A stretch of 60,007 nt of DNA from Octopus bimaculoides. Lineage: Eukaryota. The translations under genes and the position numbers were made by a program. Positions 6,100 through 59,268 of this stretch are shown in pieces. The stretch covers positions 6,939,260 to 6,999,266 of the forward strand of contig NC_068999.1 in assembly GCF_001194135.2 (NCBI RefSeq), in the 5' to 3' direction. The notes under the pieces are model-generated. The model was not told the origin of the DNA, made no database searches, and saw only the letters and a program-made list of their open reading frames with translations. Each line of letters begins with the position of its first letter. Position 1 is the first letter of the stretch.

Positions 6100-7100
6100 G
6101 ATATACTCTCTTTTGTGGCAGTGCATCTAACACGACCCATCGTCTGAAGTTTTGACAGCTCCTTCGGGTTTGTTGTCCTGGAGGAACTGGTTTTTTGTTT
6201 GTGGGTGGGAAGCAATGTGGTCATAGACTTGCCCTTGAACTTTGAACATGGGCGTAAATTCATGTTCAACTATCTCCTTAGATGCACCAGACGATGTAGT
6301 TTGAAATGCAGAGTTGTATTGTTTGATATTGATCAGAAAATCCTTTGACTGGATGGCTGTGCCTTCCATAAGAGGTTGAGGTGCTGGGGATCTTTTTTAA
6401 AACGGGGGGCCACATTTTTCATTAACGAAACACTTTGAAACTTGGAACACTGGTACAATGTGTCATATAAAACATCTTTTTCTCTTAGTCTTCTTTAAAA
6501 AAAAAAGAAATCCAGAAGCTATTCCATGTTAAAGTTGTCGTATTTCTATAATTTCAACCAATCACTGACGTCCATTCAGCTGATATACATTAAGTGCCGA
6601 CTACATAAACAAATGATTCTGAAACAACCCTAACCCTAAAGTTAGGGTTAGGGTTAAAGCAAATTTAAAATGAAAAAAGTAAATAAAACGAAGGTATGGA
6701 GATTAAATACGCTTTACACCAAAGGAGTAAATGTAAACAACTGAATACTTGTCAGTGATTGGTTGAAATTATCGAAATAAGACAATTTTTTACATGAAAT
6801 AAATTCGAATACAAAAATATTTTTATGTTCTATAACACAAAATAGATAAGTATACGAAGTTTGAAAGTCTTTCCGTACCAAAAACACTACGTAAAACATT
6901 AATGAAAAATGTGGCCCCCGTTTTAAAATAGATCCGGTGCTGGTAATCTTAGCTTGCTGCCTGAGCAGCACATGCCATTAGTTTCATTTAGAAATTAAGC
7001 TTTGCAGAAACAACAATTTGTGTTCAGCACACTAACTTGGACAAAATTATTGTTTTTATAAAGGTGGGATGGATCATATCTGAAAGCAGCTCCAGGAGTT
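6100..7100 (-). mobile_element. Degenerate Helitron Rep fragment, interrupted by a MITE
   Basis: With the MITE and one TSD removed, the minus strand reads AAFRYDPS...NCCFCKA*FLNETNGMCCSGSKLRLPAPQPLMEG...FLINIKQYNSAFQTTSSG...PMFKVQGQVY, matching Helitron Rep N-terminal motifs. Confidence 0.85.
6388..6935. mobile_element. MITE with TIRs, 8-bp TSD and central telomeric palindrome
   Basis: TIRs ggatc...aaaacggggg(g)ccacatttttcattaa; TSD GGTGCTGG at 6380-87 and 6936-43; aaccctaaccctaa/ttagggttagggtt at 6626-6655. Confidence 0.9.
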
Positions 7101-13247: not shown

Positions 13248-13513
13248 GGTCCAGATGGACTATATGTAATCTGAACCTTTCCCCCCTAACTCAAACCCTA
13301 ACCCTAAACCTAACCCTAACACTAGTTTTGTGAGATTTGGCTGTTATTTCTAGCATGTAAATAGCCTGCTTGGTGGTGGGGGGGAATTGAAATTTATTCA
13401 AAAATTTTTTTTTCAGAATCGGAATCTCCATAGCCTAAAACGTGGGATTCCGTAAAAAAAAATTAATAAATAAGGGGGGGAAAGGTTCAGATTACATATA
13501 GTCCATCTCTACC
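13248..13513. mobile_element. MITE with long TIRs, 8-bp TSD and internal CCCTAA repeats
   Basis: TIR core agatggactatatgtaatctgaacctttccccc; TSD CAACGTTT at 13240-47 and 13514-21; degenerate ctaacc repeats about 13285-13320. Confidence 0.88.
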
Positions 13514-15768: not shown

Positions 15769-15960
15769 GGTACTACTAAAGCAGCGCGGACCCGAACGCG
15801 CAGTCGCGCGTCGTGAGTGGTCGATCCTAACCCTAACCCTAAACACGTATTCATTTGCACACGCGGGTTAGGGATAGGGTTAGGGTTAGAATCAACCACT
15901 CCAGACTAGCTAGCGCGGACGTGCGACTGCGCGTTCGATCCGCGCTGCTTTAGTAGTACC
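15769..15960. mobile_element. 192-bp palindromic MITE with 9-bp TSD (Mutator-like) and inverted telomeric repeats
   Basis: TIR ggtactactaaagcagcgcgga...gaacgcgcagtcgc; TSD GAAATAGTT at 15760-68 and 15961-69; CCCTAA repeats on the left arm, TTAGGG repeats on the right arm. Confidence 0.92.
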
Positions 15961-32445: not shown

Positions 32446-33883
32446 ACATTTATCATATTCCAAGTCAAATGGAAAGACTAGCTGTGTCCCTTAAGTGTGT
32501 TATTTTATAGTTGACATTGTTGTAACAAGTTCTACCACGTTCCAGAGTTCTAATTCTCCAGACAGTAAGTCATATTCATGGTATTTAATTACCCCTTTGT
32601 TCATATCGACAGGCTACTTGCATTTGTCTCCTGTTGTATATTGTGACCAGTAAAAGGATGACAACTGAGTAGAGTTTGGTCTTGCGCTCCATTACTCGTT
32701 GAGGGCCACCTGCTGGGAGCAGGAGATCTGTTACCAGCATCCAATGATGGGCTGAGAGTGTCATCCTTTTCACAGTTATTTGGGTTGGCATTAGTGCTTA
32801 AGTGTGAATTTCATGTTAAGAGTCACTCCATATACAATGTCAGCTCTAACGTGGTTACCCACCAACACTTAGAGACACCACCTTTGCCCTGTGTAACTTG
32901 CCACAAATGCAGAGGTTACACCAGTGTATGTAGGGCACGTGGCACCAATTCCCTCAGCTGTTCAGATGGACAGCCAAATGCAGAATTACATTATCCAATT
33001 TCAAAGAGATTTAACTGTTCTTTCTTTCATGCTGAATAAGGTCTCAGAGAATCCATTGGCAACTTGTAATCTCCTTTGGTTAATGTTTGTACTAATGTTT
33101 ATATGCTGAGCTTATCTACCGAAGAAGATAACAAATGAGCAACAATCATCATCATCATCATCATCATACTTCGGATAAAAAGAGTGGATATGTTTCCATT
33201 ATGTGTTACTTTATACTTACCATTTGTTGTAGAAGAGTGCAACTTTGATGCAAATCTGATGAAGTGCCACTCTAATGTCTAAAACTGCTAATATTACATA
33301 AATTTTCACTTCAAATTTTTGTGTAAACTGCTGTTACAAGCAGAATTGGTGCAGAAACAATTGTAATGAATCATTAAAGATGTGTTAAAATATTTTCTTT
33401 GTCTTCTTATTATTTGGATTATAATTTACTCTTCACTTCACCCACACAACAGTTTTGCCATTGTGAAATCAGGATTTCCTACACTTGAAGAACGTTAGTA
33501 TTAGTCTGGAATCCAACAGTGTTAATAGCCCAGAACTTGAGTTGAGTACTGCATTGGAAATACCCTGCCAGGAACTAAGATATATATATATATATAAAAA
33601 GTAAAAAAGAGTCAAAAGGAAGAGTAAGTATGGTTAGGCAGCTTTTTAATTGCTACAATTGTTTCGATACATACAGATCCTCGTATATACAGGATTTAAA
33701 GTTTAAATTAAATTATTTAACGATTTACCTGTATAAGAAGATCTATATGTATCTCCTCGGGCGATACTCAGTTGCTGTCCCCGTAAGCAAAATTTTGATT
33801 TCCATGCTACAACACCCATGGCTTCTTCTTTGGAAATTCTAAGGGTGAACGAGCTCTATTTGTACTTTTATACNNNNNNNNNN

Positions 33884-39377: not shown

Positions 39378-40753
39378 CTGGAAGCAAAAAAAAAGTAGAG
39401 TTAATATCTGTAATAGGAAGAAGGTAAGGCAGATAAAACAGCAGAAAATCTTGTTAGCAATAGACTAAAATATACATATATAGATATATCTACTACATAT
39501 GTGGAAAATCGGTGTGTGTTTGTTTGTGGCGTTGTTAGCTAACTCCTCCTACATCGTTTTATTGATTGATCAGAAAAATAGTGTGTGCGTTTAATTAGTA
39601 AAAAAGAAAGACCATCCCCACACACACACGATACATATTGAGTACTCTTTTACTACTTTCTATTTTCATGCTCCTAAAATATATTTTTATAAATGAAAAC
39701 AAGTGTGAAACTCAGAGTAGCAACAGTTTCTAGTGTATGAATAGGGCTGCCAATGTGACCGATGCCAGGGCTGCTTGACTGGCTCCCGTGCCAATGGCAC
39801 ATAAAAAGCACCATCCGAATGTGGCTGATGCCAGTGTTCCCTGACTGGCTCCAGTGCCGGTGGCACATTAAAAGCTCCCACTACTCTCGGAGTGGTTGGC
39901 GTTAGGAAGGGCACCCAGCTGTAGAAACATTGCCAGATCAGATCGGAGCCTGGTGCAGCCGCTGGCTTTCCAGGCCTCAGTCAAACCGTTCAATCCATGC
40001 CAGCATGGAAAACAGAAGTTAAACGATGATGATGATGACATGCATTGTGTAGTATCTTACACTTCTCTTTACATACTCCATTAGATATATTTGGGGTTCT
40101 ATAAGGATGGAAGAGCATTATCCAGAGCTGGATTGTGACAGAGAAACCCTGAAATAAGCCAAGTATGACATCATCATTGGTTTTACATCTACTTTTCTGT
40201 GTTTGCATGAGTCAGATGGAGCTAACCCCACCTTGTTTCCAAGAGAGGTATTAATCTTTCGTCTATCAAACAGCCTGGACATGTTTTTATGGAGAGAACT
40301 TGCAACAAATGACACTGTCATTGTTTACAATTGGCAAACACACATAAAAACAGCAGAAATATGAACTCACAAACACACATCATCATTGTTGTTCCATGCT
40401 TGCAAGAGTCAAATGGAATTTGCTGAAGCAGATTTCTACAGCCCGATGCTTCCACCAGTTGCCATTAGATGCCCTTAGGCTTTTTTTCAGTTTCCACAAA
40501 CCAAATTCACTTAGAAGGCTTTGGTAGACCTGAGGCTACAGTAGAAATTGCTTGTCCAATGTGCCATACAGTGAGATTGAACCCAAACCCCATGTGCTGG
40601 AGAAGCATACTTCTTCATCACACAGCTATGTTTGCTTATATAACAACAGAGAATATTTTGCTGCTATTTCAAAATGCAATAATCATCAGTTTTAATAATT
40701 ATCAAAACGAAGGGATATGAAATATAAAGCGTTTTTCTTTGTTTTCTTCTAAC

Positions 40754-40867: not shown

Positions 40868-41611
40868 CTGTCAAAAGAAAAGTACATAAAACATAATCTT
40901 CAGTATAAATATTAACACACACACACACACACGGGAAAAAAATTAATAACAAATATGAAAGACAAAAGCAATAATTGGATAATTCCTGATCATTTAGCAT
41001 TCAAAAACTTCTCTCAAATGTAATGCTTACCTACCTATTTGAATTAATCATGCATTAGCTAGTAGCTTTGAGATTTTGACCCTGTGACTGTCTATTCTCA
41101 GAATGACATTGCAGGATGGATATGAGAGGCCAGATCTGATCAGTCTGAACATAAAACAGGAAGAATATTTGGGCTGGACATGGCTGGATTAAAAAAACAC
41201 AGCAAAGAGTTTTCTTTCTTTTAGTACTTAAGTCCCAAGTTGGCCCTGACCATCCATGCCCATCTTAGTTCATTTTCAAGCATAGTGTATCTTGTACAAC
41301 ATTATCCAATGTGTCTAATACTTTAAGATGGTAAGGGTATAGTTTGAGGGAGATTTGGTTGCTCTTTTTTGACAGGTACTTTAGTTTGTTAACTCTGAAA
41401 GCTACAGAGATAAAGTTGACCTCGGCTAGATTTGAACTCAGAACATAGAGATTTGAAACAAATACTGTAAATCATTTTGTCTGACGCTTAAACAGTTCTG
41501 CCAAGATGGAGGTTAAATGATGATGATGATGAAAAGGATGAAAGGTGAAGGTCATCTCCTCACTGCCACCACCTGCCCATCAAAAACAACAACAACGTTT
41601 CAGATTTTTGC

Positions 41612-41910
41612 ATCATCATCATCATCGTTTAACGTCCACTTTCCATGCTAGCATGGGTTGGACGATTTGACTGAGGACTGGTGAAACCGGATGGCAACAC
41701 CAGGCTCCAATCTGATCTGGCAGAGTTTCTACAGCTGGATGCCCTTCCTAACGCCAACCACTCAGAGAGTGTAGTGGGTGCTTTTACGTGTCACCCGCAC
41801 GAGGGCCAGTCAGGCGGTACTGGCAACGGCCACGCTCAAAATGGTGTATTTCATGTGCCACCCGCACAGGAGCCAGTCCAGGGGCACTGGCAACGATCTC
41901 GCTCGAGAAC
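41612..41910 (-). mobile_element. Abundant interspersed repeat with (GAT)n tail (other copies about 34040-34200, 39740-40040, 45920-46090, 53510-53700)
   Basis: Shared 'ttccatgctagcatgggttggacg...ggatgcccttcctaacgccaaccac' core. Confidence 0.75.
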
Positions 41911-42654: not shown

Positions 42655-43467
42655 NNNNNNNNNNNNNNNNNNNNNNNNNNNNNNNNNNNNNNNNNNNNNN
42701 NNNNNNNNNNNNNNNNNNNNNNNNNNNNNNNNNNNNNNNNNNNNNNNNNNNNNNNNNNNNNNNNNNNNNNNNNNNNNNNNNNNNNNNNNNNNNNNNNNNN
42801 NNNNNNNNNNNNNNNNNNNNNNNNNNNNNNNNNNNNNNNNNNNNNNNNNNNNNNNNNNNNNNNNNNNNNNNNNNNNNNNNNNNNNNNNNNNNNNNNNNNN
42901 NNNNNNNNNNNNNNNNNNNNNNNNNNNNNNNNNNNNNNNNNNNNNNNNNNNNNNNNNNNNNNNNNNNNNNNNNNNNNNNNNNNNNNAATAAATAAGCGAA
43001 CGTAAAAGTAATATTTCTAAGTTTCTAAAATACTAAACCAAAATTGGTAAAAAATGATTGAAATATAATTTAAAAATTTTTAATATCCATAGGGAGAAAC
43101 GTGATTGTGTGGTTAAGATGTTTGCATTGCAGCCATGGGGTTTCGGGTTCAATCCCACAGCATGGCACCTTGGGACAGGTATTTTCTTCTATAGCCCCAA
43201 TATCACCATCATTTCATGTCCATTTTTGCATGTTTGCATGGGTCGAACAGAATTCATTGTGGTGGATTTTCCAGGGCCAGATGTAGTTGGGCAATTAGAA
43301 ACAGGAAGATACCCTGGCTGGGAAAATATTCACTCGCTCCAACAAAAAACAACCTTGACCATCGTGCAAGAAAAATGGACGCAACACAAATAAAACCATA
43401 AAGCAGATATTACTTGCACAAACACCTAAAACTCCAAAATATATACCAGGAGACCGATTGTACTCAC

Positions 43468-43620: not shown

Positions 43621-44280
43621 CTATGGATGGAGAAAAAAAAGATCAAATTACAAATTTAAAATGAAATCTTGCATTTTGAAGATATTTTATGTGGAATGAG
43701 CAGGACCCATAGTAAACCTACTGTTTTATTTCTGAAAACTTCATCCAAAAAACTTGAAAGCTGAGTCTGTATCAAAGATAGTCACTCATCTTTTCATCAC
43801 TCATTGAAAAGTGATGGAAATTGGAATACGATGATTACTTAATGCATTTTGTATACTTTATGCACAATTTTATGGACTTAATACACAGCATTCTCCCTCT
43901 TTTTCTCTCTACTTTTTGTTTTGCTCTTAGCCTTTCCCTTCAGCGCATCATGTGACAGCATTACAGACAGATTAAGTAAGAAGGAAAAAAAAATCTTGGT
44001 TTTAAAAAGAAAAAAAATTACACATTTCACTCACCACCACTTCACCGAAGTGAAGGAAATTGGAATATGATGATTACATGCCAGGGGCACATTAAAAGCA
44101 CCCCTTAACAGACACTTCCCCACATTTATCTCAACAGACAAAAATGCAACTTAAATTTCTTTCTACACACAACACACACACAAAAAAAAAAGAGATTTTT
44201 TTCGAAAATTGTACAAAACGTACCAGTATGGAACATAGATATGAAATAGTAATGATGATGATGTACAAAACATGAGTTAC

Positions 44281-44379
44281 CTCCAAATTGTCAACTTTGA
44301 TTTTCGGTCTTTTGCGCTGAGCTTTCTTTCCAAATGTCACACCGTAGCTCTCGGTATCCAAAAGATGAGGACGAGCATA
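44281..44379 (-). CDS. GNL2: GNL2 exon: YARPHLLDTESYGVTFGKKAQRKRPKIKVDNLE
   Basis: 33 codons; TFG.K.QRKRP motif. Confidence 0.94.
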
Positions 44380-45435
44380 CTGAAAGGCAAGAAATGGAGA
44401 AATGAATACATTAAATTTAACATCTGCTACTCCTGCATCCCACCCTCGTCCTTCTCTTGTCTATCATCTTGGTTCATACCTGTCTGTGAGCCTCTGCCCC
44501 TTGCACACCTGTATCCTCTTTGCCCCATCAACCCTTTCCTCCCCTAACACTCATACTTCTCTATCACCTGAGAGCAGGAAGGTGCACGCTACATCCCCTT
44601 GCTTTCTCAATTACCTCCTTTCCCACCCCGAGCCATTTCCACTTCCCATTATTTTCCCCCCACCAGCTGAGTGATAAAAATGGAAGGGAATCTGGAGAAG
44701 AAGATATTGGAAGAAGTGGTGAAGGGTGATGTGGGAGAAAGTTAGTCTCACAAAGGAGACAGAAGCAACACAACAAACGGCATGGCTGTGTGCTGGAGAA
44801 GACCTATAGTGCGATGTGTTCTTGAGCAAATCACTTCATCTCATCTTGCTCTGCGATCACTTCGACACCTGACGCATGGCACACTGTGCACCTGTTCAGA
44901 CAACATCAATCTGATGGAGGGAGTAGCCTAATATGCAGCATGAACATCTGATCATTATAAACCAATCGTTTGTGCTGGTCATTCGGCAGAAGCTGAACGC
45001 TCATACATCGTCTATGATGGGAGAGTCCTTCATATATGTGTGTGTGTGTGAAAAGAAATAGTTATTGGCAAAAGATATGAGCATTGGTGAAAAATTCCTC
45101 ATGAATCTGTGCATCCTTATTGTTTTATGTCTGATATCTGGCACGGGTTGGATAAGTCTCCTGAGGTGGTATTTCACAGCTGGATGCCTTACCTGTCACC
45201 AACCCCTATAGTTGCATCTTACAACAAGCAGGAACACAATGTACCTAATCTAAAACAAAGGAAGTACCTTATAGTATTTATGCCACTCGAGTTACATTGA
45301 TTCTCCCCCCCCCCCATTACTCCTGAGATTGGAAACATAAATACAGCAAACCAGGGAATGGTACAACTAATGATGCTATTGACAACAAAATGTAAAGTAA
45401 AGATAAATCAATAAAATGAAAAATGGTCTACACAC

Positions 45436-45569
45436 TTTGGCAGCTTCATTCAGTAGGGAAACAGGAAGTTTACTCTGTTTCATAATCATCTTGTAAGGGT
45501 CCTTCTTAACTTTTTCCATCTCCTCTTGAAATCTCTGCAGTGCATTCTGGGTAATCACTCTGGTATTAC
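45436..45569 (-). CDS. GNL2: GNL2 exon: (G)NTRVITQNALQRFQEEMEKVKKDPYKMIMKQSKLPVSLLNEAAK
   Basis: NGP1NT-domain sequence; 2 nt plus 44 codons. Confidence 0.95.
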
Positions 45570-46192
45570 CTGTGCAGCAAAAATAATAAATGACGATCAA
45601 ACCTCGTTACAGAAAAAAAAACTTCTTACGTCAAAATGTAATTTATCTTTATGCAGTTTTATATTCTTTTGTTTGTTTCAATCATTTGATTGCGGCCATG
45701 CTGGAGCACTGCTTTCAGTCGAACAAATTGACCCCAGGACTTATTCTATTGGTCTCTTATGCTGAACCACTAAACACACCCACATCGGTTGTCAAGCGAT
45801 GGTGGAGGACAAACACAGACACATACATAAATTAGAGGATTTACAGTTTCTGAGAGAAGGTATGGTTCCAAGTTCTATTGTGTTGAAGTAACCATTCCAT
45901 TATGCCAGAAACTTTCCTTAATCATCATTTAGCGTCTGTTTTCCATACTGGCCTGGGTTAGATGGTTTGACTGGAATTGGTAAGCCAGGATCCAGTCTGT
46001 TTTGGCTTTGTTTCTACGGCTGGATACCCTTCCTAATTAATGCCAACCACTTTACAAAGTGTATCGGGTGCCTTTAACATGTCACCAATTACCAGATTGA
46101 AAGAGTACTGGGGTTGATGTCAGACTAAAAACCTCTTGAAGAAAAGCATAACAAAAAAAAAAGTAAGAAAGATAAGAGCACAATGTATTTAC

Positions 46193-46287
46193 CAAACCAT
46201 CTTCTATTTGGTTCCACTCGAGCAACAGTTCCAGATTTTAACCAAGTTTGAAATGGTGCTGGCCGTAAGATTTTTCCTGCACTGTCT
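46193..46287 (-). CDS. GNL2: GNL2 exon: (R)DSAGKILRPAPFQTWLKSGTVARVEPNRRWF(G)
   Basis: 95 nt with matching phases; VARVEPN..WFG motif. Confidence 0.94.
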
Positions 46288-46441
46288 CTGTAAAAATAAT
46301 TAAAGAATTGTGATTAGAATGCATGTTCTTCTATGTGTCTCATAAAATTAAAGACACTTAGCCAAGGTGCCACGCAGTGGGAATGAACCCGGAACCATGT
46401 GGTTGGTAAGCAAGCTACTTACCACACAGCCACTCCTACGC

Positions 46442-46487
<46 letters not shown>

Positions 46488-46501
46488 TGTATATACATGA
46501 A

Positions 46502-46533
<32 letters not shown>

Positions 46534-46620
46534 AGATAGTTAAACAAAGAGAATTTGAGTTAATACTGAGAAGTCACACTAATTTCATGAAACCTACAAA
46601 AGAGAAGTAATCAATGTTAC

Positions 46621-46714
46621 CTCTTTGGTTTGTAATTTCTGTACATTTGGAGACGTTTAATGGTGCTCCGGTCCCTCATGTTATGTCCACCATGCCCTTC
46701 AGATTTGGGGCGAT
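46621..46714 (-). CDS. GNL2: GNL2 exon 2: (D)RPKSEGHGGHNMRDRSTIKRLQMYRNYKPK(R)
   Basis: 94 nt; NMRDR.TI.RL.MYR motif. Confidence 0.94.
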
Positions 46715-48466
46715 CTGGAAAAAAAAAAATTTTTTAAAATAAACAATGGGAAAACATGAAGTTAGGAATTAACAGTTTATATGGAAATTTAAGAAAACGT
46801 GATCTGTTGTAGTTTTAGGGTTAGGGTCTTGCAGCTGTAACTGGTTATGAAAGGAACTGGATCATCAATTCACAAGTTGTAAGTTCAAATCCCTCACAGG
46901 TGCTCCATTATTTCTCTAGGCAGGACTTGACAATTAACCCTTTCGATTATTAACTCATCTGAGACTCTCCCTGCCTCTACAATACAATCTTCCTGTTTTG
47001 AAGTGATACAAATTCAAACTTTCCATCAGAATTTCCTGTTAATTTATGTCCGAAACACCAGTTTCATAATGCTTTCTACTTATAGGTAGAGGACCTGAAA
47101 TTTTTTGGGGGAAGGGATCTAACCAATTACATCAACCTTCAGAGCTCAACTGATACTTATTTTATCAAACGCCAGAAGGATGAAAGGGGACCTTGGCAGA
47201 ACTTGAAGACAGAAACATAAGGACGGACGACATTAAGCATTCTGTCCAGTGTGATAATGATTGTGGTAGCTTGCTGCCCTAAATGTCCCTTTAATAATGG
47301 GGTGTCAAGGAGATCACGTGGATAGAGCAGGGAGAACAGGTGGGTAGAGTTTGCAAGAATATTCGGTAAATTTAGTTTCATGCCAGACTCGATTTCAGTA
47401 CTAAATAATTTTTTTCCCATAGTTGACCCCTTAAGCTGTTGGAAACGTATTCTTTATTGTGGAAGAACTGGATGCCCATCCTGTCGCCAACCCTCATCCG
47501 TTTCCAAAGAAAGTAATATTTTTTTTCCTTGGCAAGGCATATTATTCACGGATTATTGGAAATGAACGACATTCATTTACAAACATCACGCGATACATAG
47601 CCAAGCAAGTGGCCTTCGTGCTTAGTCTCACTGCGTTGCACCTTGGGCAAACGTCTTCTGCTACAGGCCTGGACCTATCAAAACCGGATGAGTGGATCTA
47701 TTGGACGGAAACTGAAAAAAGCTCGTCGCGTGTATGTACGTGGACAGACACACACACACGATGGGCTTTTTTCAGTTGTTGAATTACCAAATCTATTCAC
47801 AGAACTTTGGTCAGCCAAGAGTTACTAGCACTTCTATCTGTTAATTATTTCCAAATAAGGTTTCATACCATTTAACGAACTCAGTTGTCGGTATCATCGT
47901 CATAATCATCAATCCCTGGATATTACTGTATTGAGTCCTACGATTTCATGGTGTATAAGTGACCGAGATCACAACATCCACCCTGAACGGGACGCCAGTC
48001 CGTCACAGGTTTACTCGTCTACAGGTGACTGGACTGGAGCGACTTTGCTCCAGAACAACGACGAACCACCTGGTCCGCGAACCGAAACCACGATCCTACG
48101 ATCTTGAGTGCAACACTCTAACCACTAAGACGCGCACCTTCACTGCCGTCATTTGTGAAATGATGAAGTTGAAGAAATATGAGAAACCACATATAAATAT
48201 GTCAAGTTATTTAGTGGGGATGTAGAGTGGAGTGGGGATCTTGCATTAATTCCTATTTTCATTTTTCTCAAGAGCAATGAAAAATCGAATCTCAATAACT
48301 AAATACATAGAATAGGCACACAGCTATAAATTCCTTCACTAAATCTTTTCTCCTTTGGAAGCGATCGACATGTTTTATCTTCATGTACATGTTCTAAAGT
48401 TACGCATTATAGATTAGACACGTGGGGACCACAGAGCAGAGGAAAATAAACAGTGAAATAACTTAC

Positions 48467-48548
48467 CTATATTCATACTATGGTTAGATTTATTAAGCCT
48501 TTCGGGCCTCTTGCCCCTTTGGCCCCTGTGTACTTTATTACTGACCAT
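48467..48548 (-). CDS. GNL2: GNL2 first coding exon: MVSNKVHRGQRGKRPERLNKSNHSMNI(D)
   Basis: ATG at 48548, donor GTAAGT; phase 1 joins exon 2; resembles the NOG2 N-terminus (S.HSMNPDR). Confidence 0.85.
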
Positions 48549-49636
48549 CTTTCCCCCTTTGATTTTCCAAGACTTGTAAAAGAATTGCCAGAAAAAATAT
48601 CCGAAATCAACAACGATATCACTTTCTGAACTTTATTAATACAGATAAATTATTTACTGTCGGTGATTGGATGAAATTAAAATTGAACTGTTTCAACAAA
48701 AGAAAACGAATTTCGATATTAAGTGAGTTAATTTTTTTTATTTAGATTTTTTAATATGCAACTTACATAATATATCAAGTTATTAAGAAATATTTGTATA
48801 GCATTTTTATTGCATTTGCTGCCAAACACAATTGCATCAAACCGGTGTACTTGGAAATAAGTAATGTCTGTTTAAAATACCGCAGTACGAATTGAGTTTT
48901 ATTTTTTCAATTATAAAATTTGAGTCGCGTGTTTATTTTTTCATATAGCATGTAGCATACAAAAAGATGTGGTTTATAATCTAAGTAGTTTAACGTAACA
49001 TTATTAAATTGGTTCGATTCTAATACAGAGTTCAAAGCGCTGAGTTTTGTGGATATGGGACTGTTCATTAAATCGACTCTCACATTACATCACTGTTGTT
49101 TATTTTATTGGCATTCGAAGGATAATAGGCTAAACTGATTTAAGCAGGATTCGAACTAAGAATGTACAGGAACACAGCTAAAAACCTTGAAGTATTCTGC
49201 TAAGACCAGTTTCACTAGTCCCGGGGGGCATGCGAGGTTCTTAGCCTCTACACCATGAGACTCAGCAAGTAAAGATACATTTACACACACAAAACAACAG
49301 AAGACTAAGTGACAGGGTTGGGATTCGAACCCAAACGGTTCTTTCTACCAAATTGTTATTGGTCAACCTAGAGGATAAGCTGTCCTGCAGTGGGACTGGA
49401 CTCAAAACCGCGTAGTTACGAAGTCAGCTTTTTAACCACACAACTAGACTTATTACTACATGATTTAACGGATCTTTACGAATAATTATCACTAACTCAT
49501 GGGAAAGGGTTTTGGCAAGGAATTAAATACTTTGCCCCTAAACATATTTAATCCCATTCATAGAATCTGAGGTTTGCCATTTTGCTAACTCTTTAACGTT
49601 GAAGATAGGTTTCGTGTACAACGTTTTAATTTCAAA

Positions 49637-49747
49637 ATGTCCCGCAATATAAGTTCTCATCGATCTGGGACTTGTACAGCTGCGAAAAACGTCGTTAAGA
49701 AATATAAGAGAAAATATAGGATTGCTGGCGATAATTCGATAGATATG
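49637..49747 (+). CDS. CENPW: CENP-W-like histone-fold protein exon 1: MSRNISSHRSGTCTAAKNVVKKYKRKYRIAGDNSIDM
   Basis: AAAATG start, 37 codons, donor GTAAGC at 49748. Confidence 0.62.
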
Positions 49748-49979
49748 GTAAGCCAATGAGATTAATAAATCCTTTTGTTTTTAAATCTAAATGGCGATTT
49801 GACAGGAGATTTCCATCTCTATACCAGACACTGTTTTTATTAATATTGGTGTTTATTGGCGGTTTGCAACCGTTTGTCCTGTTTACTCGCTGCCAATTTT
49901 GAAAAGTAAATTTATATAGCCTTCCTCCTGTTCTGTTTTGTTTAGTAATTTGACTTGCACTTCGGCGGAGGTAAAGAAT

Positions 49980-50077
49980 ACGCACACCACCCGTTTTCCG
50001 CGTAACCCTAACCCTAAAAGTTACTCTAACCGTAACCCTACATCTAACCCTAAACGCCGAAAACGGGTGGTGTGCGT
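49980..50077. mobile_element. 98-bp MITE-like element with 18-bp TIRs and internal CCCTAA repeats
   Basis: acgcacaccacccgtttt / aaaacgggtggtgtgcgt; no TSD recognised. Confidence 0.75.
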
Positions 50078-50151
50078 CGTCTACTTTTATAAAACAACTG
50101 ATAAGGAAGAAACTTGAAACACTATTTATAAAGTTTATTATTTGGCATAAC

Positions 50152-50537
50152 GGTAGAGATGGACTATATGTAATCTGAACCTTTCCCCCCTTATTTATTA
50201 ATTTTTTTTACGGAATCCCACGTTTTAGGCTATGGAGATTCCGATTCTGAAAAAAAAATTTTTGAAAAATTTCAATCCCCCCCCCCACCAAGCAAGCTAT
50301 TTACATGCTAGAAATAACAGCTAAATCTCACAAAACTAGTGTTAGGGTTAGGGNNNNNNNNNNNNNNNNNNNNNNNNNNNNNNNNNNNGGGGGGGGGGGT
50401 CGAAATTTTGAAATTGAGATTTTTGAAAAAAGTTTTTCAGAATCAGAATCTCCATAGCCTAAAACGTGGGATTCCGTAAAAAAAAACAAAATTTAAAAGC
50501 GGGGGTATACCCAGATTACATATACTCCATCTCCACC
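50152..50537. mobile_element. Two oppositely oriented relatives of the 13248 MITE joined across a 35-N gap
   Basis: 50152-50353 is the reverse complement of the 13248 element up to its TTAGGG tract; 50389-50537 is a diverged forward copy. Confidence 0.75.
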
Positions 50538-51124
50538 CTTCGGATAGGTACACTCCCGACTGTTCCTTTATAACTTTCGTTGGTGGGGTGGGGGAAGTTT
50601 ATTTTAATAAGATTTTCCAGATATGGTATAGTTTAGGATTATGTCGGAATATTTTTTCAGAAGGATCTCGGATAATTCACATATCACAATTTATTTTCTC
50701 TTAACTTTCTGAATTCCGCTTTAGAGCACGCAATATGATTCCCTCTTTATTTTACGGAATTTTCAGAAATGTTTTATGAATCTGTTCAGCGATCTTACGA
50801 TACCAGTTCTGAAGCTAAGTGACAGCTTCAGAACTGGTATCGCCAGATCGCCATCTGTTCTACACAGGGGAATTCATATGATTATGAAAACAAAAAACAA
50901 AACAAAAAGGAACGAGAGATTTAAGGAGTATTTAGCTGTTATTTTTAGCACACCTCACGACCACCTTATAACCTCCTCGTTTGTCAGTCTGACGTATTGT
51001 TTTTCAATATCTTTCTTTCCACAAACACATTGTCAATAATTCGGATTTTCTGTAAATCTGTTATAAAAGGCAAGCATCATTAAAGCATTTAAAATATATC
51101 TATCTTTCTTTTCCATTGTTTTAG

Positions 51125-51238
51125 GTATGGTTATCATATTTGAAGTTCCTTGAAATGTTTAGTAAAGATCTACGTGAATATGCTGTACAGAATCAAATTA
51201 AGAAATATACTCCTCTTCAAATAAATAAACTATATATT
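51125..51238 (+). CDS. CENPW: CENP-W-like exon 2: VWLSYLKFLEMFSKDLREYAVQNQIKKYTPLQINKLYI
   Basis: Polypyrimidine/AG acceptor, GTAAGT donor, 114 nt; aligns to recalled human VHLNCLLFVHRLAEESRTNACASKCRVINKEHVLAAAK. Confidence 0.65.
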
Positions 51239-51482
51239 GTAAGTTTGAGATATTTTGTCATTTATTTTTCTTTTGCCTTAGTTGTATTTTCTAACATTTC
51301 CCTGTTTTTTTTAACAATGGAGTTCATTTTCTTTCATTCTTCAGTCTTTAGATTGCAACCATGGTGTGCTGTTGTTCGGTATGGGATCTTTTAGCTCAGC
51401 TGTTTTGGCATCACTGATTCGATGCTGACTTATTTGACATCAGGCATTTTAATGTTTCTCTCGTTCTCTCTCTCTTTATGTG

Positions 51483-51843
51483 TGTTGTTAGCACTCCGTC
51501 GCTTACGACGTCGAGGGTTCCAGTCGATCCGATCAACGGAACAGCCAGCTCGTGAAATTAACGTGCAAGTGGCTGAGCACTCTACAGACACGTGTACCCT
51601 TAACGTAACTCTCGGGGATATTTAGTGTGACAAGGCTGGCCCTTTGAATTACAGGCACAACAGAAACAGGAAGTAAGAGTGAGAGAAAGTTGTGGTGAAA
51701 GAGTACAGCAGGGTTCGCCACCATCCCCTGCCGGAGCCTCGTGGAGCTTTAGGTGTTTTTGCTCAATAAACACTCACAACGCCCAGTCTGGGAATCGAAA
51801 CCGCGAGTCCGCTGCCCTAACCACTGGGCCATTGCGCCTCCAC
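51483..51843 (-). mobile_element. tRNA-derived SINE (second family; related copy about 47950-48145)
   Basis: Minus-strand head gtggaggcgcaatggcccagtggttagggcagcggactc...ggtttcgattccc with A/B-box-like motifs. Confidence 0.7.
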
Positions 51844-51978
51844 CGTTTATGTGTGTAAGCATCTAGTTACGTCTGTGTATATTTCTGCATCTATGTGAAT
51901 GTACATATCTATTTATCTTTTGTTTTACAATAGTAATTTTTTTCTTTATATAAATATGGTTTTTAATTCCTTTTCCAG

Positions 51979-52005
51979 GATAAAATGGAGAAATACAAGA
52001 AATGA
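51979..52005 (+). CDS. CENPW: CENP-W-like exon 3: DKMEKYKK*
   Basis: Strong ttccttttccag acceptor, 8 codons plus TGA; compare human VILKKSRG*. Confidence 0.58.
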   Translation, partial: DKMEKYKK

Positions 52006-54177
52006 CTTGGACATGAAATACATGGCAAAAAATTTTTTAAATTACCCCTTTTTTTTTTTTAATATACTTGGACATTCCCATTGCTCAATGGATGTTTCTG
52101 GACACTTTTTGATTACATTTTTCCCTTTGCTGGGTTCATTCTTTGAAGAGGTCCCTTCATTGGTCTTTGCCATGCTGCCTTGACACTTTGAGAACATCCT
52201 TTTTGCTATGGTAACTTCATTCTTTGAAGATGTCTCCCCCCCCCATTTTTTTTTGTTCATGACATATTTTTATTAGGGTTGTCTTAATATGCATCATACT
52301 TTTGAAGTGATGTGTCTTTTAAAAGCTGAAGCAAGATGGGAAATCAATGATGGGTTAATTGTTTTTTTTTTTAACCCCTATTTTCTTTTTATTTCATATA
52401 ATTCAGTTTTACACACAATAATGTGCTTTTACACTTTTGTCTGTTTTCGATTTTCTTTTTTCCTTTTAATATAAAAAAAATTTTCACCTTAATGTACTCT
52501 TGTCTAACCCATGAAATCATATTAATACAGACAGAGCTGTGTGGTTAAGGAAGCTCACTTTGCAACCACCTGGTTTCAGGTTAAATCTCACTCAGCAGCT
52601 CCTTAACCCTGTAGCATTCAGATTACTCTATGAAGTATGTTTATTTATTCAAATTGGCTTGAATTGCTCATGCATTATCTCATTTCTAGATTTCAATTAT
52701 GCGATTTCATATTTTTACAACGAAATTGTAGGGTATGAATGAGAGACCAAATCCAGTTGGTTTGAACATAACACAAATAGAGTATTTAACCCTGGATTGA
52801 CCAATGCCTTGTGAGTGAATTTGGTAGACAGAAACTGTGTAGAAGCCCATCATGTATAAATATATGTGTGTGTGTTTTGTTTTTCTCCCCATCATTTAAC
52901 AGCCAGTGTTGGTTTATTTATATCCTTGTAACTTAGCAATTTGGCAGAAGCTGATAGAATAAGTACCAAACTTAAAAATAACAAAAATTGTTGAATGGTT
53001 GATTCGTTTGATTACACTCTTCAGGGCAGTGCCCCAGTATGGCCACAATCCAATGAATGAAATAAGTACAAGAAAGAAAAGATGTTTCTTCTTCACATTT
53101 TTTTTGTATAATTGTTTTCCTTGTAAAAATGTAAAATAAAACTTTATTAGCATTTATATTCTGTACAGCTGATCTTTTATTGTCTGAATATTGGTTAAAA
53201 TAGCTCCACTCCTGGTTGAGTTATTAGATGTGGTGTAAGACATGATTGTAAAATAAAAAAAATAAAAAGTGTATTCCCCAATGATATTATATGCAGTTTT
53301 TATATTTTGTATTATAAAAAACAAAAAATGAAAAACACAACCTCATCCATGTCCTGGTGGCATGATAGAAACAGAAAAATAAAATAATGTAAACCAATAA
53401 ATTGTTTTGGTATTTACTCATTCCTTTTAAAATTTCTTCCTTGCATCATGTTTGCAGTTCCACTCCCTCTCCTAGCTGAGAGGTCTACGTCTCACAAGTT
53501 ACTTAGTGATCCTGATGTTGTCAGTGTCGTGTAAAAAGCACCCAGTACACTCTGTAAAGTGGTTGATGTTAGGAGGGGTATCCAGCTGTAGAAATCATGC
53601 CAAAGCAGAGAAATGGAGCCTGGTGTAATTCTCTGGCTTGCCAGTTCCTCTCAAATCATCCAACCCATGCCAGCATGGGACACAGATGTTAAATGATTAT
53701 AAGCATCAACCTCTGTTACTCTGTGGTTAGCTTTTGCAGAAGTTGTCCTCCTTGGAACAGTTTGAGGTATTTTGGCTGCTTATTCAGTGTTGCTGATTTA
53801 TTTGGCATCAGACATTTTAATGTGCCTCTTGTTCTCTCTCTCTCTCTTTGTGAGCATATTCCTCTTTATGTGTTTGAGGAGAAGTGTTTATGTCAACTAT
53901 GTTCAGCTAACCTTTAACACTGTAAGTGCATCATGTCCATATGAGTTTTCTCCCTTGTAGTAATAGGGCAGGGGGAAAAGTTCTAGAGAAAATGCAACGT
54001 GCTAAAGGTGAAAAATTCTAATGCCTCTCTCTCTTTCATATATATATATATATATATATAAGAGAAAGAGGCATTAGAATTACATATATATATGTATTTA
54101 TTTTCTCTTAGTTAATAATTAACTCCGACAAAATAAATTGGTTAATAGATACCAGGGTAGCAAAGATNNNNNNNNNN

Positions 54178-55346: not shown

Positions 55347-56305
55347 NNNNNNNNNNNNNNNNNNNNNNNNNNNNNNNNNNNNNNNNNNNNNNNNNNNNNN
55401 NNNNNNNNNNNNNNNNNNNNNNNNNNNNNNNNNNNNNNNNNNNNNNNNNNNNNNNNNNNNNNNNNNNNNNNNNNNNNNNNNNNNNNNNNNNNNNNNNNNN
55501 NNNNNNNNNNNNNNNNNNNNNNNNNNNNNNNNNNNNNNNNNNNNNNNNNNNNNNNNNNNNNNNNNNNNNNNNNNNNNNNNNNNNNNNNNNNNNNNNNNNN
55601 NNNNNNNNNNNNNNNNNNNNNNNNNNNNNNNNNNNNNNNNNNNNNNNNNNNNNNNNNNNNNNNNNNNNNNNNNNNNNNNNNNNNNNNNNNNNNNNNNNNN
55701 NNNNNNNNNNNNNNNNNNNNNNNNNNNNNNNNNNNNNNNNNNNNNNNNNNNNNNNNNNNNNNNNNNNNNNNNNNNNNNNNNNNNNNNNNNNNNNNNNNNN
55801 NNNNNNNNNNNNNNNNNNNNNNNNNNNNNNNNNNNNNNNNNNNNNNNNNNNNNNNNNNNNNNNNNNNNNNNNNNNNNNNNNNNNNNNNNNNNNNNNNNNN
55901 NNNNNNNNNNNNNNNNNNNNNNNNNNNNNNNNNNNNNNNNNNNNNNNNNNNNNNNNNNNNNNNNNNNNNNNNNNNNNNNNNNNNNNNNNNNNNNNNNNNN
56001 NNNNNNNNNNNNNNNNNNNNNNNNNNNNNNNNNNNNNNNNNNNNNNNNNNNNNNNNNNNNNNNNNNNNNNNNNNNNNNNNNNNNNNNNNNNNNNNNNNNN
56101 NNNNNNNNNNNNNNNNNNNNNNNNNNNNNNNNNNNNNNNNNNNNNNNNNNNNNNNNNNNNNNNNNNNNNNNNNNNNNNNNNNNNNNNNNNNNNNNNNNNN
56201 NNNNNNNNNNNNNNNNNNNNNNNNNNNNNNNNNNNNNNNNNNNNNNNNNNNNNNNNNNNNNNNNNNNNNNNNNNNNNNNNNNNNNNNNNNNNNNNNNNNN
56301 NNNNN
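55347..56305. other. Assembly gap (others at 25216-25411, 26730-27023, 33874-33883, 42655-42986, 50354-50388, 54168-54177)
   Basis: Runs of N. Confidence 1.
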
Positions 56306-57029
56306 TTTTAAATGAGAATATCTGAAATAAAATCGACTGCTCTCACAAGTGAAAATATTAAAAATGAACCAAACTGCTCTCAAAAACTAAGTAAAAAAAA
56401 ACGGGAAAAATAATCCAGAATCCTTGTCCGGTACTAGATCGATCCCCAAATCTAATCAGTTTATGCTAGTCACGAGGCCAAACATCCCTGAAATTTTCAT
56501 CCGAATCCAGCTAGCAGTTCTTGAGATATCTTGTCCATAGACAAACAAACAAACACGACTGAAAAACGATACCTCCACCTTCGCTAAAGTGGAGGTAACA
56601 ATGAAGGTGGGTTGGCGATGGTGCTGGTGGTGGTGGGGAATAATGCAGAGTACGGGGAGAGAGCAGTGTTCTCAGCATGGTGGAAACAAATACAATGTTC
56701 TGTTTGAATGCACCCATTTACCGATTTTCTTACTGATGATGTCTGTTGATGAAAGGCGGTGAGCTGGCAGAAACGTTAGCATGCTGGGCGAACTGCTTAG
56801 CGGTATTTCGCCTGACTTTACGTTCTGGGTTCAAATTCAGCTGAGGTCGACTTTGACTTTCATCCTGTTGGGGGTCGATAGATTAAGTACCAGTTGTGTA
56901 CTGGGGTCGATCTAATCAACTGGCCCCTTCCCCAAAAACATTTCGGGCTTTGTGCCCTGAGTAGAAAAGGATATATGTTGATGAAAAAGGTCCACCTGTT
57001 TTTCTGCAAGCCCGTTTTTACCAGTCCTT

Positions 57030-58159: not shown

Positions 58160-59268
58160 CTGTACAAGACAAAGACAAATTAATGAGAAGAAATTATAAG
58201 AAATTTATAATTCATAAGAATATGTTATTTATAATTTATGAATAATCTTTTCTACTCTAGGGACAAGGCCTGAAATTTTGGGGGAGGGGGGAAGGAATAG
58301 ATTAGATCGACCGCAGCACACAACTGGTACTTAATTTATCAACTCTGAAAAGACGAAAGGCAAAGTCGACCTCAGCGGAATTTGAACTCAGAACGTAAAG
58401 ATAGATGAAATACCGCCAAGCATTTTGCCCGGCGTGCTAACGTTTCTGGCAGCTTGCAGCCTTATAATTTATGAAAAATGTCTAATGTATAAAAAAAAAC
58501 TTGGGGTACAATAAATATATATATATATATATATATATACATACATATATATTCATATATACACAAATATATGAGGTGGTGCTGGCTTTGGGTAAAAGAA
58601 AATACAGGCAGATCAGCTATTAATTTGATAAAAAAAAAAACCTGTCCATGTGTCTACACCTGCTAAAAATTTCAGATCTCGAATTAAGTAGTGTATTGGA
58701 ATTGCTGGATCTAAGCCATATGTTAATGGATCTAAGAAATGCAACTTAAGCACAGCAGAAAAATCTCATATTCTTCTTAGATCCTGTAATTCCAACAGAC
58801 TGCTTAATTCGGGATCTGAAATTTGCTTTCATCCTTTTAGGATCAATGAGATAAGTACCAGTTGAGCACTGGCATTGATGTAATTGGCTTATCCCCTCTC
58901 TCACTAAAATTATTGGTTTTGTGCCGAAATTTGAAAATGTTAAAGAAGGTAAACTTGGCAGAATTGTTAGCAGATTGGACAAAATACTCAGAGGCATTTC
59001 TTCTGGCTCTTTACATTCTAAGTTCAAATGCCACCAAAGTCACCTTTGTCTTTCATCCTTTCAGGGTTGACAAAATAATGTAATTGACTATCCCTCTCCC
59101 ATCAAAATTGCTAATGAGTTCAAATGCTGCTGCAGTTGACTTTGCCCTTCATCCTTTCAGGCTTGATAAAATAAATATCAGTTATGCACTGGGGTCAATC
59201 TAATTGACTATCCTCACCTCCCATCAAAATTGCTGGCTTTGTGCCAAAAATTAGAAAGAATTATTTAC

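What the first reader, a model, noticed from the sequence alone, without database searches (positions are those of the whole stretch)
49637..52005. Hidden three-exon gene for a divergent CENP-W-like histone-fold protein
Seen: three canonically spliced phase-0 exons (37 + 38 + 8 codons) give an 83-aa basic protein, MSRNISSHRSGTCTAAKNVVKKYKRKYRIAGDNSIDM|VWLSYLKFLEMFSKDLREYAVQNQIKKYTPLQINKLYI|DKMEKYKK*, which the ORF track never shows as one ORF. Recalled: human CENP-W (88 aa) reads ..FLKRVFKRKKPQLRLEKSGDLL|VHLNCLLFVHRLAEESRTNA..|VILKKSRG, with exons 2 and 3 of the same 38 and 8 codons, and the hydrophobic pattern aligns. Inference: a cephalopod CENP-W ortholog detectable mainly through intron positions. 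This would imply a CENP-T-W(-S-X) inner-kinetochore module in this lineage; such small, fast-evolving genes are easily missed.
Basis: partly seen in the sequence, partly recalled or inferred. Interest (0 to 1): 0.78.

Follow-up and report, generated by a model that had tools for sequence, protein, structure and literature searches.

The report
Octopus CENP-W kinetochore histone-fold gene
This is a real three-exon octopus gene for a small basic histone-fold protein that is most likely the very divergent ortholog of kinetochore protein CENP-W; that is an expected housekeeping gene which public databases already hold, but only as an "uncharacterized protein".

Summary
Exons 49637-49747, 51125-51238 and 51979-52005 (+) have GT-AG, phase-0 junctions and encode the quoted 83-aa protein. 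The N gap (50354-50388) lies between two inverted repeat copies inside intron 1 and touches no coding sequence. The gene is not "hidden": the identical protein is UniProt A0A0L8H315 (Octopus bimaculoides, uncharacterized). O. vulgaris has a gap-free ortholog with 89% identity and the same exons.

The CENP-W reading is supported by weak but concordant evidence:
- The only PDB sequence hits are chicken CENP-W (E about 0.003-0.005).
- A pan-eukaryote CENP-W HMM scores 15.6 and 18.4 bits; 0 of 2000 shuffles reach that.
- hhalign gives 84% probability against CENP-W and 0.3% against CENP-X.
- AlphaFold predicts helix-loop-long helix-loop-helix, and the top Foldseek hits are CENP-W.
- Both introns sit at the same positions and phase as in armadillo, bird, acorn worm and choanoflagellate CENP-W genes (x+38+8 codons).

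Against it, Pfam PF15510 gives no hit and no bridging mollusc sequence was found. A CENP-T partner and centromere localisation were not tested. Verdict: a new, highly divergent member of a known family, of modest interest.

The parts
49637..49747 (+). Coding exon 1 (37 codons). It encodes a basic N-terminal tail, helix alpha1 and loop L1, and ends ...NSIDM before a phase-0 donor gtaagc.
   Evidence: The exon is conserved in O. vulgaris at L001 10001-10111. Its end aligns with ...DLL| of vertebrate, hemichordate and choanoflagellate CENP-W exon 1.
49748..51124 (+). Intron 1 (phase 0, GT-AG). It contains transposon-like repeats and the assembly gap.
   Evidence: About 900 bp (50151-51051) have no counterpart in intron 1 of O. 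vulgaris.
50354..50388 (.). Assembly gap (35 N) between two inverted copies of a MITE-like repeat. It is intronic and has no effect on the coding sequence.
   Evidence: The O. vulgaris gene is gap-free.
51125..51238 (+). Coding exon 2 (38 codons): the long central helix alpha2, loop L2 and the start of alpha3 (VWLSYLKFLEMFSKDLREYAVQNQIKKYTPLQINKLYI).
   Evidence: It has the same 38-codon length as exon 2 of armadillo, bird and Saccoglossus CENP-W. It is the highest-confidence part of the AlphaFold models. Residues 38-57 are identical between the two octopus species.
51239..51978 (+). Intron 2 (phase 0, GT-AG), with a SINE-like insertion at about 51490-51810.
   Evidence: The insertion matches a different place in the O. 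vulgaris locus (L001 19027-19360) and is missing from O. vulgaris intron 2.
51979..52005 (+). Coding exon 3 (8 codons DKMEKYKK plus TGA): the basic C-terminal end of alpha3.
   Evidence: It has the same 8-codon terminal exon as armadillo, bird and Saccoglossus (...|VILKKSRG...|GVLKSCQG). K80 aligns with a nearly invariant K.
48549..49636 (.). Intergenic region of about 1.09 kb between the CENP-W-like ATG and the probable start of a divergently transcribed GNL2/NOG2-like GTPase gene. It is a presumed bidirectional promoter region and 5'UTRs; this is inferred, not shown.
   Evidence: ORF starting at 48548 on the minus strand. NGP1NT Pfam hits in downstream minus-strand ORFs; the O. vulgaris annotation has a 785-aa minus-strand gene head-to-head with the ortholog.

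Best explanation
The locus is the Octopus bimaculoides ortholog of CENP-W, the small histone-fold subunit of the inner kinetochore (CCAN).

Shown here: a conserved, intact three-exon gene encoding a 9.9-kDa protein with pI about 10. Its predicted architecture is a basic tail, then alpha1, L1, a 27-residue alpha2, L2 and alpha3.

Inferred from established knowledge of the family (chicken CENP-T-W and T-W-S-X crystal structures 3B0C/3VH5; human CCAN structures 7QOO/7R5S): the protein is unstable alone and forms a 'handshake' heterodimer with the C-terminal histone-fold domain of CENP-T. The basic alpha1/L1 surface (K17, K21, K22, K24, R25, K26, R28) would contact DNA. The T-W dimer, together with CENP-S-X, would wrap or grip centromeric linker DNA. 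This anchors CENP-T, whose N-terminal arm recruits the Ndc80 and Mis12 complexes to attach chromosomes to spindle microtubules.
For: 1. Sequence. phmmer of the protein, and of the two-octopus profile, against 177,635 PDB sequences returns chicken CENP-W as the top (single protein) or only (profile) family. E is 0.003-0.006, over query residues 16-68. An HMM built from 20 CENP-W sequences from animals, a choanoflagellate, fungi and a stramenopile, with no octopus sequence, scores 15.6 bits (O. bimaculoides) and 18.4 bits (O. vulgaris). The per-sequence P is about 1e-6 to 1e-7. None of 2000 composition-preserving shuffles exceeds 8.6 bits, and the reversed sequence scores -0.4. hhalign against that family gives 83.9% probability and E 7.7e-6 over 57 columns. 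Against CENP-X it gives 0.3% and E 0.18.

2. Gene structure. Both phase-0 introns lie at the exact aligned positions of the CENP-W introns in five other genes: armadillo (42+38+8 codons), a bird (30+38+8), Saccoglossus (38+38+8) and Salpingoeca (31+[26+12]+9). The octopus gene is 37+38+8.

3. Structure. AlphaFold with only the two octopus sequences predicts helices 10-27, 33-59 and 67-82. Its top four Foldseek PDB hits are CENP-W chains and almost all others are histones. With CENP-W homologs in the alignment, pLDDT reaches about 90 over alpha2-alpha3 and the top five hits are CENP-W.

4. Core conservation. 19 of 24 family-hydrophobic columns stay hydrophobic. L40 and A57 are invariant across all 18 aligned sequences.

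5. Constraint. The ortholog in O. vulgaris is intact, with conserved splice sites and 0 indels in the CDS against 6.3 expected (P = 0.002). dN/dS is 0.37.
Against: - The curated Pfam CENP-W model (PF15510) and every other Pfam model give no hit for either octopus protein.
- Each individual similarity score is weak: about 20 bits, roughly 20-27% identity, Foldseek E 0.1-2.
- A full HMMER scan of 1.84 billion representatives and two word-indexed searches found no intermediate (mollusc or other spiralian) sequence to bridge octopus to established CENP-W proteins.
- The C-terminus lacks the family's terminal ...K(S/F)(R/K)G motif.
- The second AlphaFold model is circular because CENP-W homologs were in its alignment.
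- No transcript evidence, no octopus CENP-T and no localisation data were available. The dN/dS test alone is not significant (P = 0.066).
Confidence: 0.85

Rival explanations
1. It is a genuine histone-fold protein but not a CENP-W ortholog. It could be a divergent member of another small histone-fold family (CENP-X/MHF2, NC2/DR1, NF-YB/C, POLE4/CHRAC, a TAF) or a lineage-specific histone-fold gene with a different partner.
For: Histone folds are structurally near-identical. After the CENP-W chains, Foldseek lists H2B, H4, H3 and MHF1 at similar TM-scores. Pfam's CENP-W model fails. The C-terminal KSRG-type motif is absent.
Against: No other histone-fold family is hit by sequence in PDB or Pfam. 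CENP-X is rejected: 0.3% hhalign probability, about 0 bits against the HMM, and no ILPQLLLDF motif. The two intron positions and phases are shared with CENP-W genes from choanoflagellate to mammal.
Confidence: 0.07
2. It is a spurious or non-functional gene model. A chance chain of short ORFs with good splice consensus was picked up by gene predictors in two closely related genomes.
For: Octopus non-coding DNA is already 86-92% identical between the two species, so conservation of the ORF is not in itself strong. The CDS substitution rate (6.3%) is only slightly below the non-coding rate (8.4%). The dN/dS test is not significant (P = 0.066). No transcript evidence was available.
Against: There are zero indels in 252 coding bases against 6.3 expected (P = 0.002). 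All four splice sites, the start and the stop are conserved. Similarity to one specific family is significant against shuffles. Chance does not explain the exact match of two intron positions to that same family.
Confidence: 0.04
3. It is a small basic helical protein unrelated to histone folds, for example a coiled-coil or nucleic-acid-binding peptide, whose lysine-rich composition produces weak spurious matches.
For: The protein is lysine-rich (19 K+R, pI about 10). The full-library scan's only other hits were long proteins matched in many stretches, which is typical of compositional matches. The octopus-only AlphaFold model has low confidence (mean pLDDT 62.8).
Against: Composition-preserving shuffles never approach the observed CENP-W score. 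The matched region is the hydrophobic alpha2 core, not the lysine-rich tail. Helix lengths and loop positions fit the histone fold.
Confidence: 0.04

Closest known systems
Vertebrate CENP-W (chicken CENP-W in PDB 3B0C/3B0D/3VH5; human CENP-W Q5EE01 in CCAN structures 7QOO/7R5S/7XHO)
   Same: Size is similar (76-88 aa against 83 aa). Both have a basic N-terminus and an alpha1-L1-alpha2-L2-alpha3 layout. The motif ..K(K/H)xK..(Y/L)R(I/L)A..(D/N)..(L/M)|V(H/W)L(S/N)(F/Y)L(L/K)FL.. is shared. Both phase-0 introns are shared, as are the 38- and 8-codon exons 2 and 3. These chains are the best sequence and structure hits.
   Different: Identity is only about 20-27%. HRLAEE is replaced by EMFSKD. The terminal LKKSRG is replaced by MEKYKK. 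The octopus protein falls below detection by Pfam PF15510.
Saccoglossus kowalevskii 'centromere protein W-like' (P0126; the invertebrate CENP-W in the van Hooff 2017 ortholog set)
   Same: Exon structure is 38+38+8 codons with phase-0 introns, almost identical to the octopus 37+38+8. It shares the aromatic YL.Y.KF pattern at the start of alpha2 (LTYLMYMKFI against MVWLSYLKFL).
   Different: MAFFT identity is about 15-18%. Saccoglossus is recognised by Pfam PF15510 and keeps the ...QG C-terminus. It has a 5-residue longer L1 region.
Fungal CENP-W (S. cerevisiae Wip1, S. pombe New1) and Salpingoeca CENP-W
   Same: They belong to the same family profile that scores the octopus protein. Salpingoeca shares both intron positions.
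   Different: Salpingoeca has one extra intron and a 9-codon last exon. The fungal sequences are as far from the octopus protein as from the vertebrate ones.
CENP-X / MHF2 (small histone-fold partner of CENP-S)
   Same: It is a small histone-fold subunit of about 80 aa in the same CENP-T-W-S-X particle.
   Different: There is no sequence relationship: hhalign probability 0.3%, HMM about 0 bits. The octopus protein lacks the C-terminal ILPQLLLDF signature.

Membership tests
CENP-W (Pfam PF15510; inner-kinetochore histone-fold protein) | Passes the curated family profile (Pfam PF15510 gathering score) | tested here: not met
   hmmscan against Pfam-A gave 0 families for the O. bimaculoides protein at E<=10 and 0 for O. 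vulgaris at E<=1. HMMER's speed filters may have removed a weak match.
CENP-W (Pfam PF15510; inner-kinetochore histone-fold protein) | Specific sequence similarity to established CENP-W proteins, above chance and above other histone-fold families | tested here: met
   PDB: the only significant family hit is CENP-W, E 0.003-0.006. Custom pan-eukaryote HMM: 15.6 and 18.4 bits, with 0 of 2000 shuffles reaching more than 8.6. hhalign: 83.9% probability, E 7.7e-6, against 0.3% for CENP-X. All scores are modest.
CENP-W (Pfam PF15510; inner-kinetochore histone-fold protein) | A single minimal histone fold (alpha1-L1-long alpha2-L2-alpha3) in a protein of about 75-90 aa with a basic N-terminus | tested here: met
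   AlphaFold helices are 10-27 / 33-59 / 67-82 with the octopus-only alignment (pLDDT 62.8) and 9-26 / 34-60 / 67-82 with the family alignment (pLDDT 73.7). Top Foldseek hits are CENP-W chains, although Foldseek E-values are not significant. The protein is 83 aa with pI 9.96.
CENP-W (Pfam PF15510; inner-kinetochore histone-fold protein) | Conserved gene structure: phase-0 introns after ...DLL (end of L1) and 8 codons before the stop, 38 codons apart | tested here: met
   Octopus 37+38+8. Armadillo 42+38+8. Bird 30+38+8. Saccoglossus 38+38+8. Salpingoeca 31+26+12+9, with the same two positions.
CENP-W (Pfam PF15510; inner-kinetochore histone-fold protein) | Reciprocal best hit: a CENP-W profile finds this protein, and no better one, in the octopus proteome | not testable with these tools
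   No octopus proteome or genome could be searched. The forward direction (octopus to PDB) gives CENP-W. No second copy exists in this 60-kb window.
CENP-W (Pfam PF15510; inner-kinetochore histone-fold protein) | Obligate heterodimer with the CENP-T histone-fold domain, and co-occurrence with CENP-T in the genome | not tested
Co-occurrence of T and W across eukaryotes is stated in PMC12678787.
CENP-W (Pfam PF15510; inner-kinetochore histone-fold protein) | Constitutive centromere localisation and requirement for kinetochore assembly | not testable with these tools
   This is experimental only.
CENP-X / MHF2 | Profile similarity and the C-terminal (I/V)LPQLLLDF motif | tested here: not met
   hhalign probability 0.3%. 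The HMM scores -0.1 and 0.2 bits, below the shuffles. The motif is absent.

The most novel reading that the evidence does not exclude
The octopus protein descends from CENP-W but has diverged so far that it may no longer work as a canonical CENP-T partner. It has lost the HRLAEE and KSRG motifs, it is invisible to Pfam, and no detectable relative outside the genus Octopus was found among billions of proteins. [quoted passage not shown] It could also mean a CENP-W-derived histone fold recruited to another partner.
Probability: 0.08. Interest if true: 0.5.

Novelty: new member of a known kind. Interest (0 to 1): 0.3.

Why it matters
It gives a functional name to a protein that two octopus genome annotations leave as "uncharacterized" or "hypothetical". 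It places a CENP-W, and by the known co-occurrence a CENP-T pathway, in cephalopods. The comparative kinetochore survey consulted here (van Hooff 2017) included no mollusc or annelid. It also shows that conserved intron positions can rescue orthology calls for tiny, fast-evolving kinetochore subunits that curated profiles miss. None of this changes the current view of kinetochore biology, because CENP-W is expected in a monocentric animal.

Tried and rejected
- Pfam-A scans of both octopus proteins gave nothing.
- The word-indexed search of 5.8 billion proteins with the octopus protein returned only its own cluster.
- The full HMMER scan of 1.84 billion representatives returned only itself plus three long proteins of 1104-2144 aa. 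These matched in 5-8 stretches, which I judged compositional and did not follow up.
- A profile of Saccoglossus, Salpingoeca and octopus sequences returned only the query sequences, so no mollusc bridge was found.
- An exact-sequence look-up of the O. bimaculoides protein and of a primate CENP-W in the contig collection found neither on record. The O. vulgaris, bird, armadillo, Saccoglossus and Salpingoeca loci were used instead.
- hhalign against tetrapod-only CENP-W gave only 16.6% probability. A taxonomically broad family alignment was needed to reach 84%.
- Literature searches for cephalopod or mollusc CENP-W/CENP-T found nothing relevant.
- The supplement of PMC12678787 holds arthropod CENP-W accession numbers but no sequences.
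- ARAGORN found no tRNA in the SINE-like intron repeat.
- CENP-X was considered as an alternative identity and rejected.
- A TTCAAA (CHR-like) hexamer just upstream of the ATG is conserved in O. vulgaris. It is too short and AT-rich to count as evidence of cell-cycle regulation.
Full report
**1. The observation**

- Exon 1, 49637-49747: 37 codons, followed by gtaagc.
- Exon 2, 51125-51238: 38 codons, preceded by ttttag and followed by gtaagt.
- Exon 3, 51979-52005: 8 codons plus TGA, preceded by ttccag.

Both introns are phase 0. The product is the quoted 83-aa protein. An in-frame stop at 49586 makes the ATG at 49637 the first possible start.

**2. The assembly gap**

The 35 N at 50354-50388 lie inside intron 1 (49748-51124), more than 600 bases from either exon.
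- The gap sits between two inverted copies of a roughly 260-bp MITE-like repeat, with arms 50149-50254 and 50433-50540.
- An intact single copy of that repeat occurs at 13253-13513 in the same window, with terminal inverted repeats and an internal TTAGGG-like tract.
- The 50151-51051 segment has no counterpart in the O. vulgaris intron.

The O. vulgaris ortholog locus (L001, chromosome-level assembly) has no N in the gene range. It shows exon 1 and exon 2 in the same order and orientation. The gap therefore has no bearing on continuity or frame of the coding sequence.

**3. The gene is not hidden**

The identical 83-aa sequence is UniProt A0A0L8H315, 'Uncharacterized protein', Octopus bimaculoides. 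This also identifies the source organism of the window. Its 90% cluster holds one more member, CAI9736626.1, 'Hypothetical predicted protein' of O. vulgaris. That protein is 83 aa and 89% identical. Two independent annotation efforts therefore arrived at the same three exons.

**4. Is it a constrained coding gene?**

- The O. vulgaris CDS keeps the start, the stop and all four splice sites.
- It differs by 16 substitutions, 6 synonymous and 10 non-synonymous. dN/dS is 0.37 and dS is 0.14.
- The excess of synonymous change is not significant on its own (binomial P = 0.066).
- The CDS has no indel, while the aligned non-coding sequence around it has 31 gap openings in 1245 columns. That predicts 6.3 in the CDS, so P(0) = 0.002.
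- Residues 38-57, the core of the long helix, are identical in the two species.

**5. What family is it?**

Negative results:
- Pfam-A finds nothing for either octopus protein.
- A scan of 1.84 billion representative proteins finds no credible relative.

Positive results:
- phmmer against all PDB sequences returns chicken CENP-W (3B0C, 3B0D, 3VH5) as the three best hits, E 0.005-0.006. The alignment pairs residues 16-67 with 10-60.
- A profile of the two octopus proteins returns those three chains and nothing else.
- I took the curated CENP-W ortholog set of van Hooff et al. 2017 (PMC5579357, Dataset EV1) and added four tetrapod sequences. An HMM built from these, with no octopus sequence, scores O. 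bimaculoides at 15.6 bits and O. vulgaris at 18.4 bits.
- Against that HMM, 2000 shuffles of the octopus sequence peak at 8.6 bits and the reversed sequence scores -0.4.
- hhalign of the octopus pair against this family gives 83.9% probability and E 7.7e-6 over 57 columns.
- The same test against a CENP-X alignment from the same data set gives 0.3%. The CENP-X HMM scores about 0 bits.
- Against tetrapod CENP-W alone, hhalign is much weaker at 16.6%. This fits a lineage that is equally distant from all known members.

**6. Gene structure, an independent line of evidence**

I mapped real CENP-W genes to their genomic loci:

| Species | Exon codons | Junctions |
|---|---|---|
| Octopus | 37+38+8 | ...SIDM\|VWLSY..., ...KLYI\|DKMEKYKK |
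| Bird | 30+38+8 | ...DLL\|VHLNF..., ...AAAK\|VILKKSRG |
| Armadillo | 42+38+8 | |
| Saccoglossus (hemichordate) | 38+38+8 | ...ELL\|TYLMY..., ...VMK\|GVLKSCQG |
| Salpingoeca (choanoflagellate) | 31+26+12+9 | ...ETL\|VYLEC..., ...AAK\|AIEAK... |

All the shared introns are phase 0, and the two shared positions are 38 codons apart.
- The sequence-only alignments place octopus V38 opposite the first residue of exon 2 in every species. They are ungapped from there to the second intron.
- The octopus gene therefore shares both intron positions and phases with a set of genes spanning choanoflagellates to mammals.
- Under a uniform model, two exact matches in a gene of about 250 bases have a chance of order 1e-4 or less.
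- The human isoform in the van Hooff set carries a 15-residue insertion exactly at DLL|VHL, which fits an intron at that position.

**7. Structure**

- AlphaFold2 with only the two octopus sequences gives a low-confidence model (mean pLDDT 62.8). It has a clear helix 10-27, loop, helix 33-59, loop, helix 67-82 pattern, which is the histone-fold layout with a 27-residue central helix.
- Foldseek against PDB ranks four CENP-W chains first (E 0.24-2.4, not significant). Almost everything else listed is a histone.
- With CENP-W homologs added to the alignment, pLDDT rises to about 90 over alpha2-alpha3 and the five best matches are all CENP-W. That alignment makes the model non-independent.
- In the family alignment, 19 of 24 columns that are hydrophobic in the other 16 sequences are hydrophobic in octopus. 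L40 and A57 are invariant.
- The protein is 9.9 kDa with pI about 10. Residues 1-31 carry 9 basic and no acidic residues.

**8. Mechanism (inferred from the family)**

CENP-W is the obligate histone-fold partner of the C-terminal histone-fold domain of CENP-T. The dimer binds DNA through basic alpha1/L1 surfaces and joins CENP-S-X in a nucleosome-like particle within the CCAN. The N-terminal arm of CENP-T recruits Ndc80 and Mis12 complexes. CENP-T and CENP-W are gained and lost together across eukaryotes, as summarised in PMC12678787. An octopus CENP-T is therefore expected, but I could not look for it.

**9. Context**

- The gene lies head-to-head with a GNL2/NOG2-like nucleolar GTPase gene on the minus strand. 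The evidence is NGP1NT Pfam hits at 45376-45600 and 44131-44361, and a probable start codon at 48548, 1.09 kb from the CENP-W-like ATG.
- In O. vulgaris the downstream neighbour is a tropomodulin-like LRR gene.
- No second CENP-W-like copy is present in the window.

**10. Verdict**

My estimate is about 85%. It rests on several independent but individually modest lines of evidence, of which intron-position conservation is the most persuasive. This is a new, highly divergent member of a known family. The gene model itself is already public but unnamed. The finding is useful for annotation and for kinetochore comparative genomics in Spiralia, but it is not surprising.

Noticed in passing
window 50149-50540 (intron 1), 13253-13513; also 6628-6653, 15831-15842, 46815-46826, 50006-50017: There is a dispersed MITE-like element of about 260 bp. 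It has roughly 33-bp terminal inverted repeats (GATGGACTATATGTAATCTGAACCTTTCCCCCC) and an internal telomere-like (TTAGGG)n tract. Two inverted copies flank the N gap in intron 1 and an intact copy lies at 13253-13513. Short TTAGGG/CCCTAA dimers recur elsewhere in the window.
   Followed up: partly
window 49975-50082: A 29-nt inverted repeat (90% complementary) encloses about 50 bp of degenerate CCCTAA repeats in intron 1. This is a small hairpin-forming, telomere-repeat-containing structure.
   Followed up: no
window 51490-51810 (intron 2): A SINE-like repeat is inserted in intron 2 of O. bimaculoides. Its only match in the O. vulgaris locus is at a different place (L001 19027-19360, 89%). ARAGORN finds no tRNA in it.
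   Followed up: partly
window ~44131-48548, minus strand: The upstream, divergently oriented neighbour is a GNL2/NOG2-like nucleolar GTPase gene. ORFs at 45376-45600 and 44131-44361 hit Pfam NGP1NT (E 1.5e-17 and 7.6e-6). The probable first coding exon starts at 48548, about 1.09 kb from the CENP-W-like ATG, which suggests a shared bidirectional promoter.
   Followed up: partly
window 39760-40040, 41611-41906, 56752-56921, 58300-58454 and others: Several repeat families in the window each match many places in the 22-kb O. vulgaris locus. One example is a unit of about 120 bp matching more than 10 sites in L001. This indicates abundant shared interspersed or tandem repeats.
   Followed up: no
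window 25216-25411, 26730-27023, 33874-33883, 42655-42986, 54168-54177, 55347-56305: There are six further assembly gaps in the window. The largest (959 N) is flanked by (TA/TATA...) 'YIYIYI'-type simple repeats.
   Followed up: no
van Hooff 2017 CenpW.fa, human entry: The human CENP-W sequence in that data set is an isoform with a 15-residue insertion (VRFHPFSGWEWGTGE) exactly at the conserved exon 1/exon 2 junction. This is consistent with an alternative exon or an alternative splice site there.
   Followed up: no
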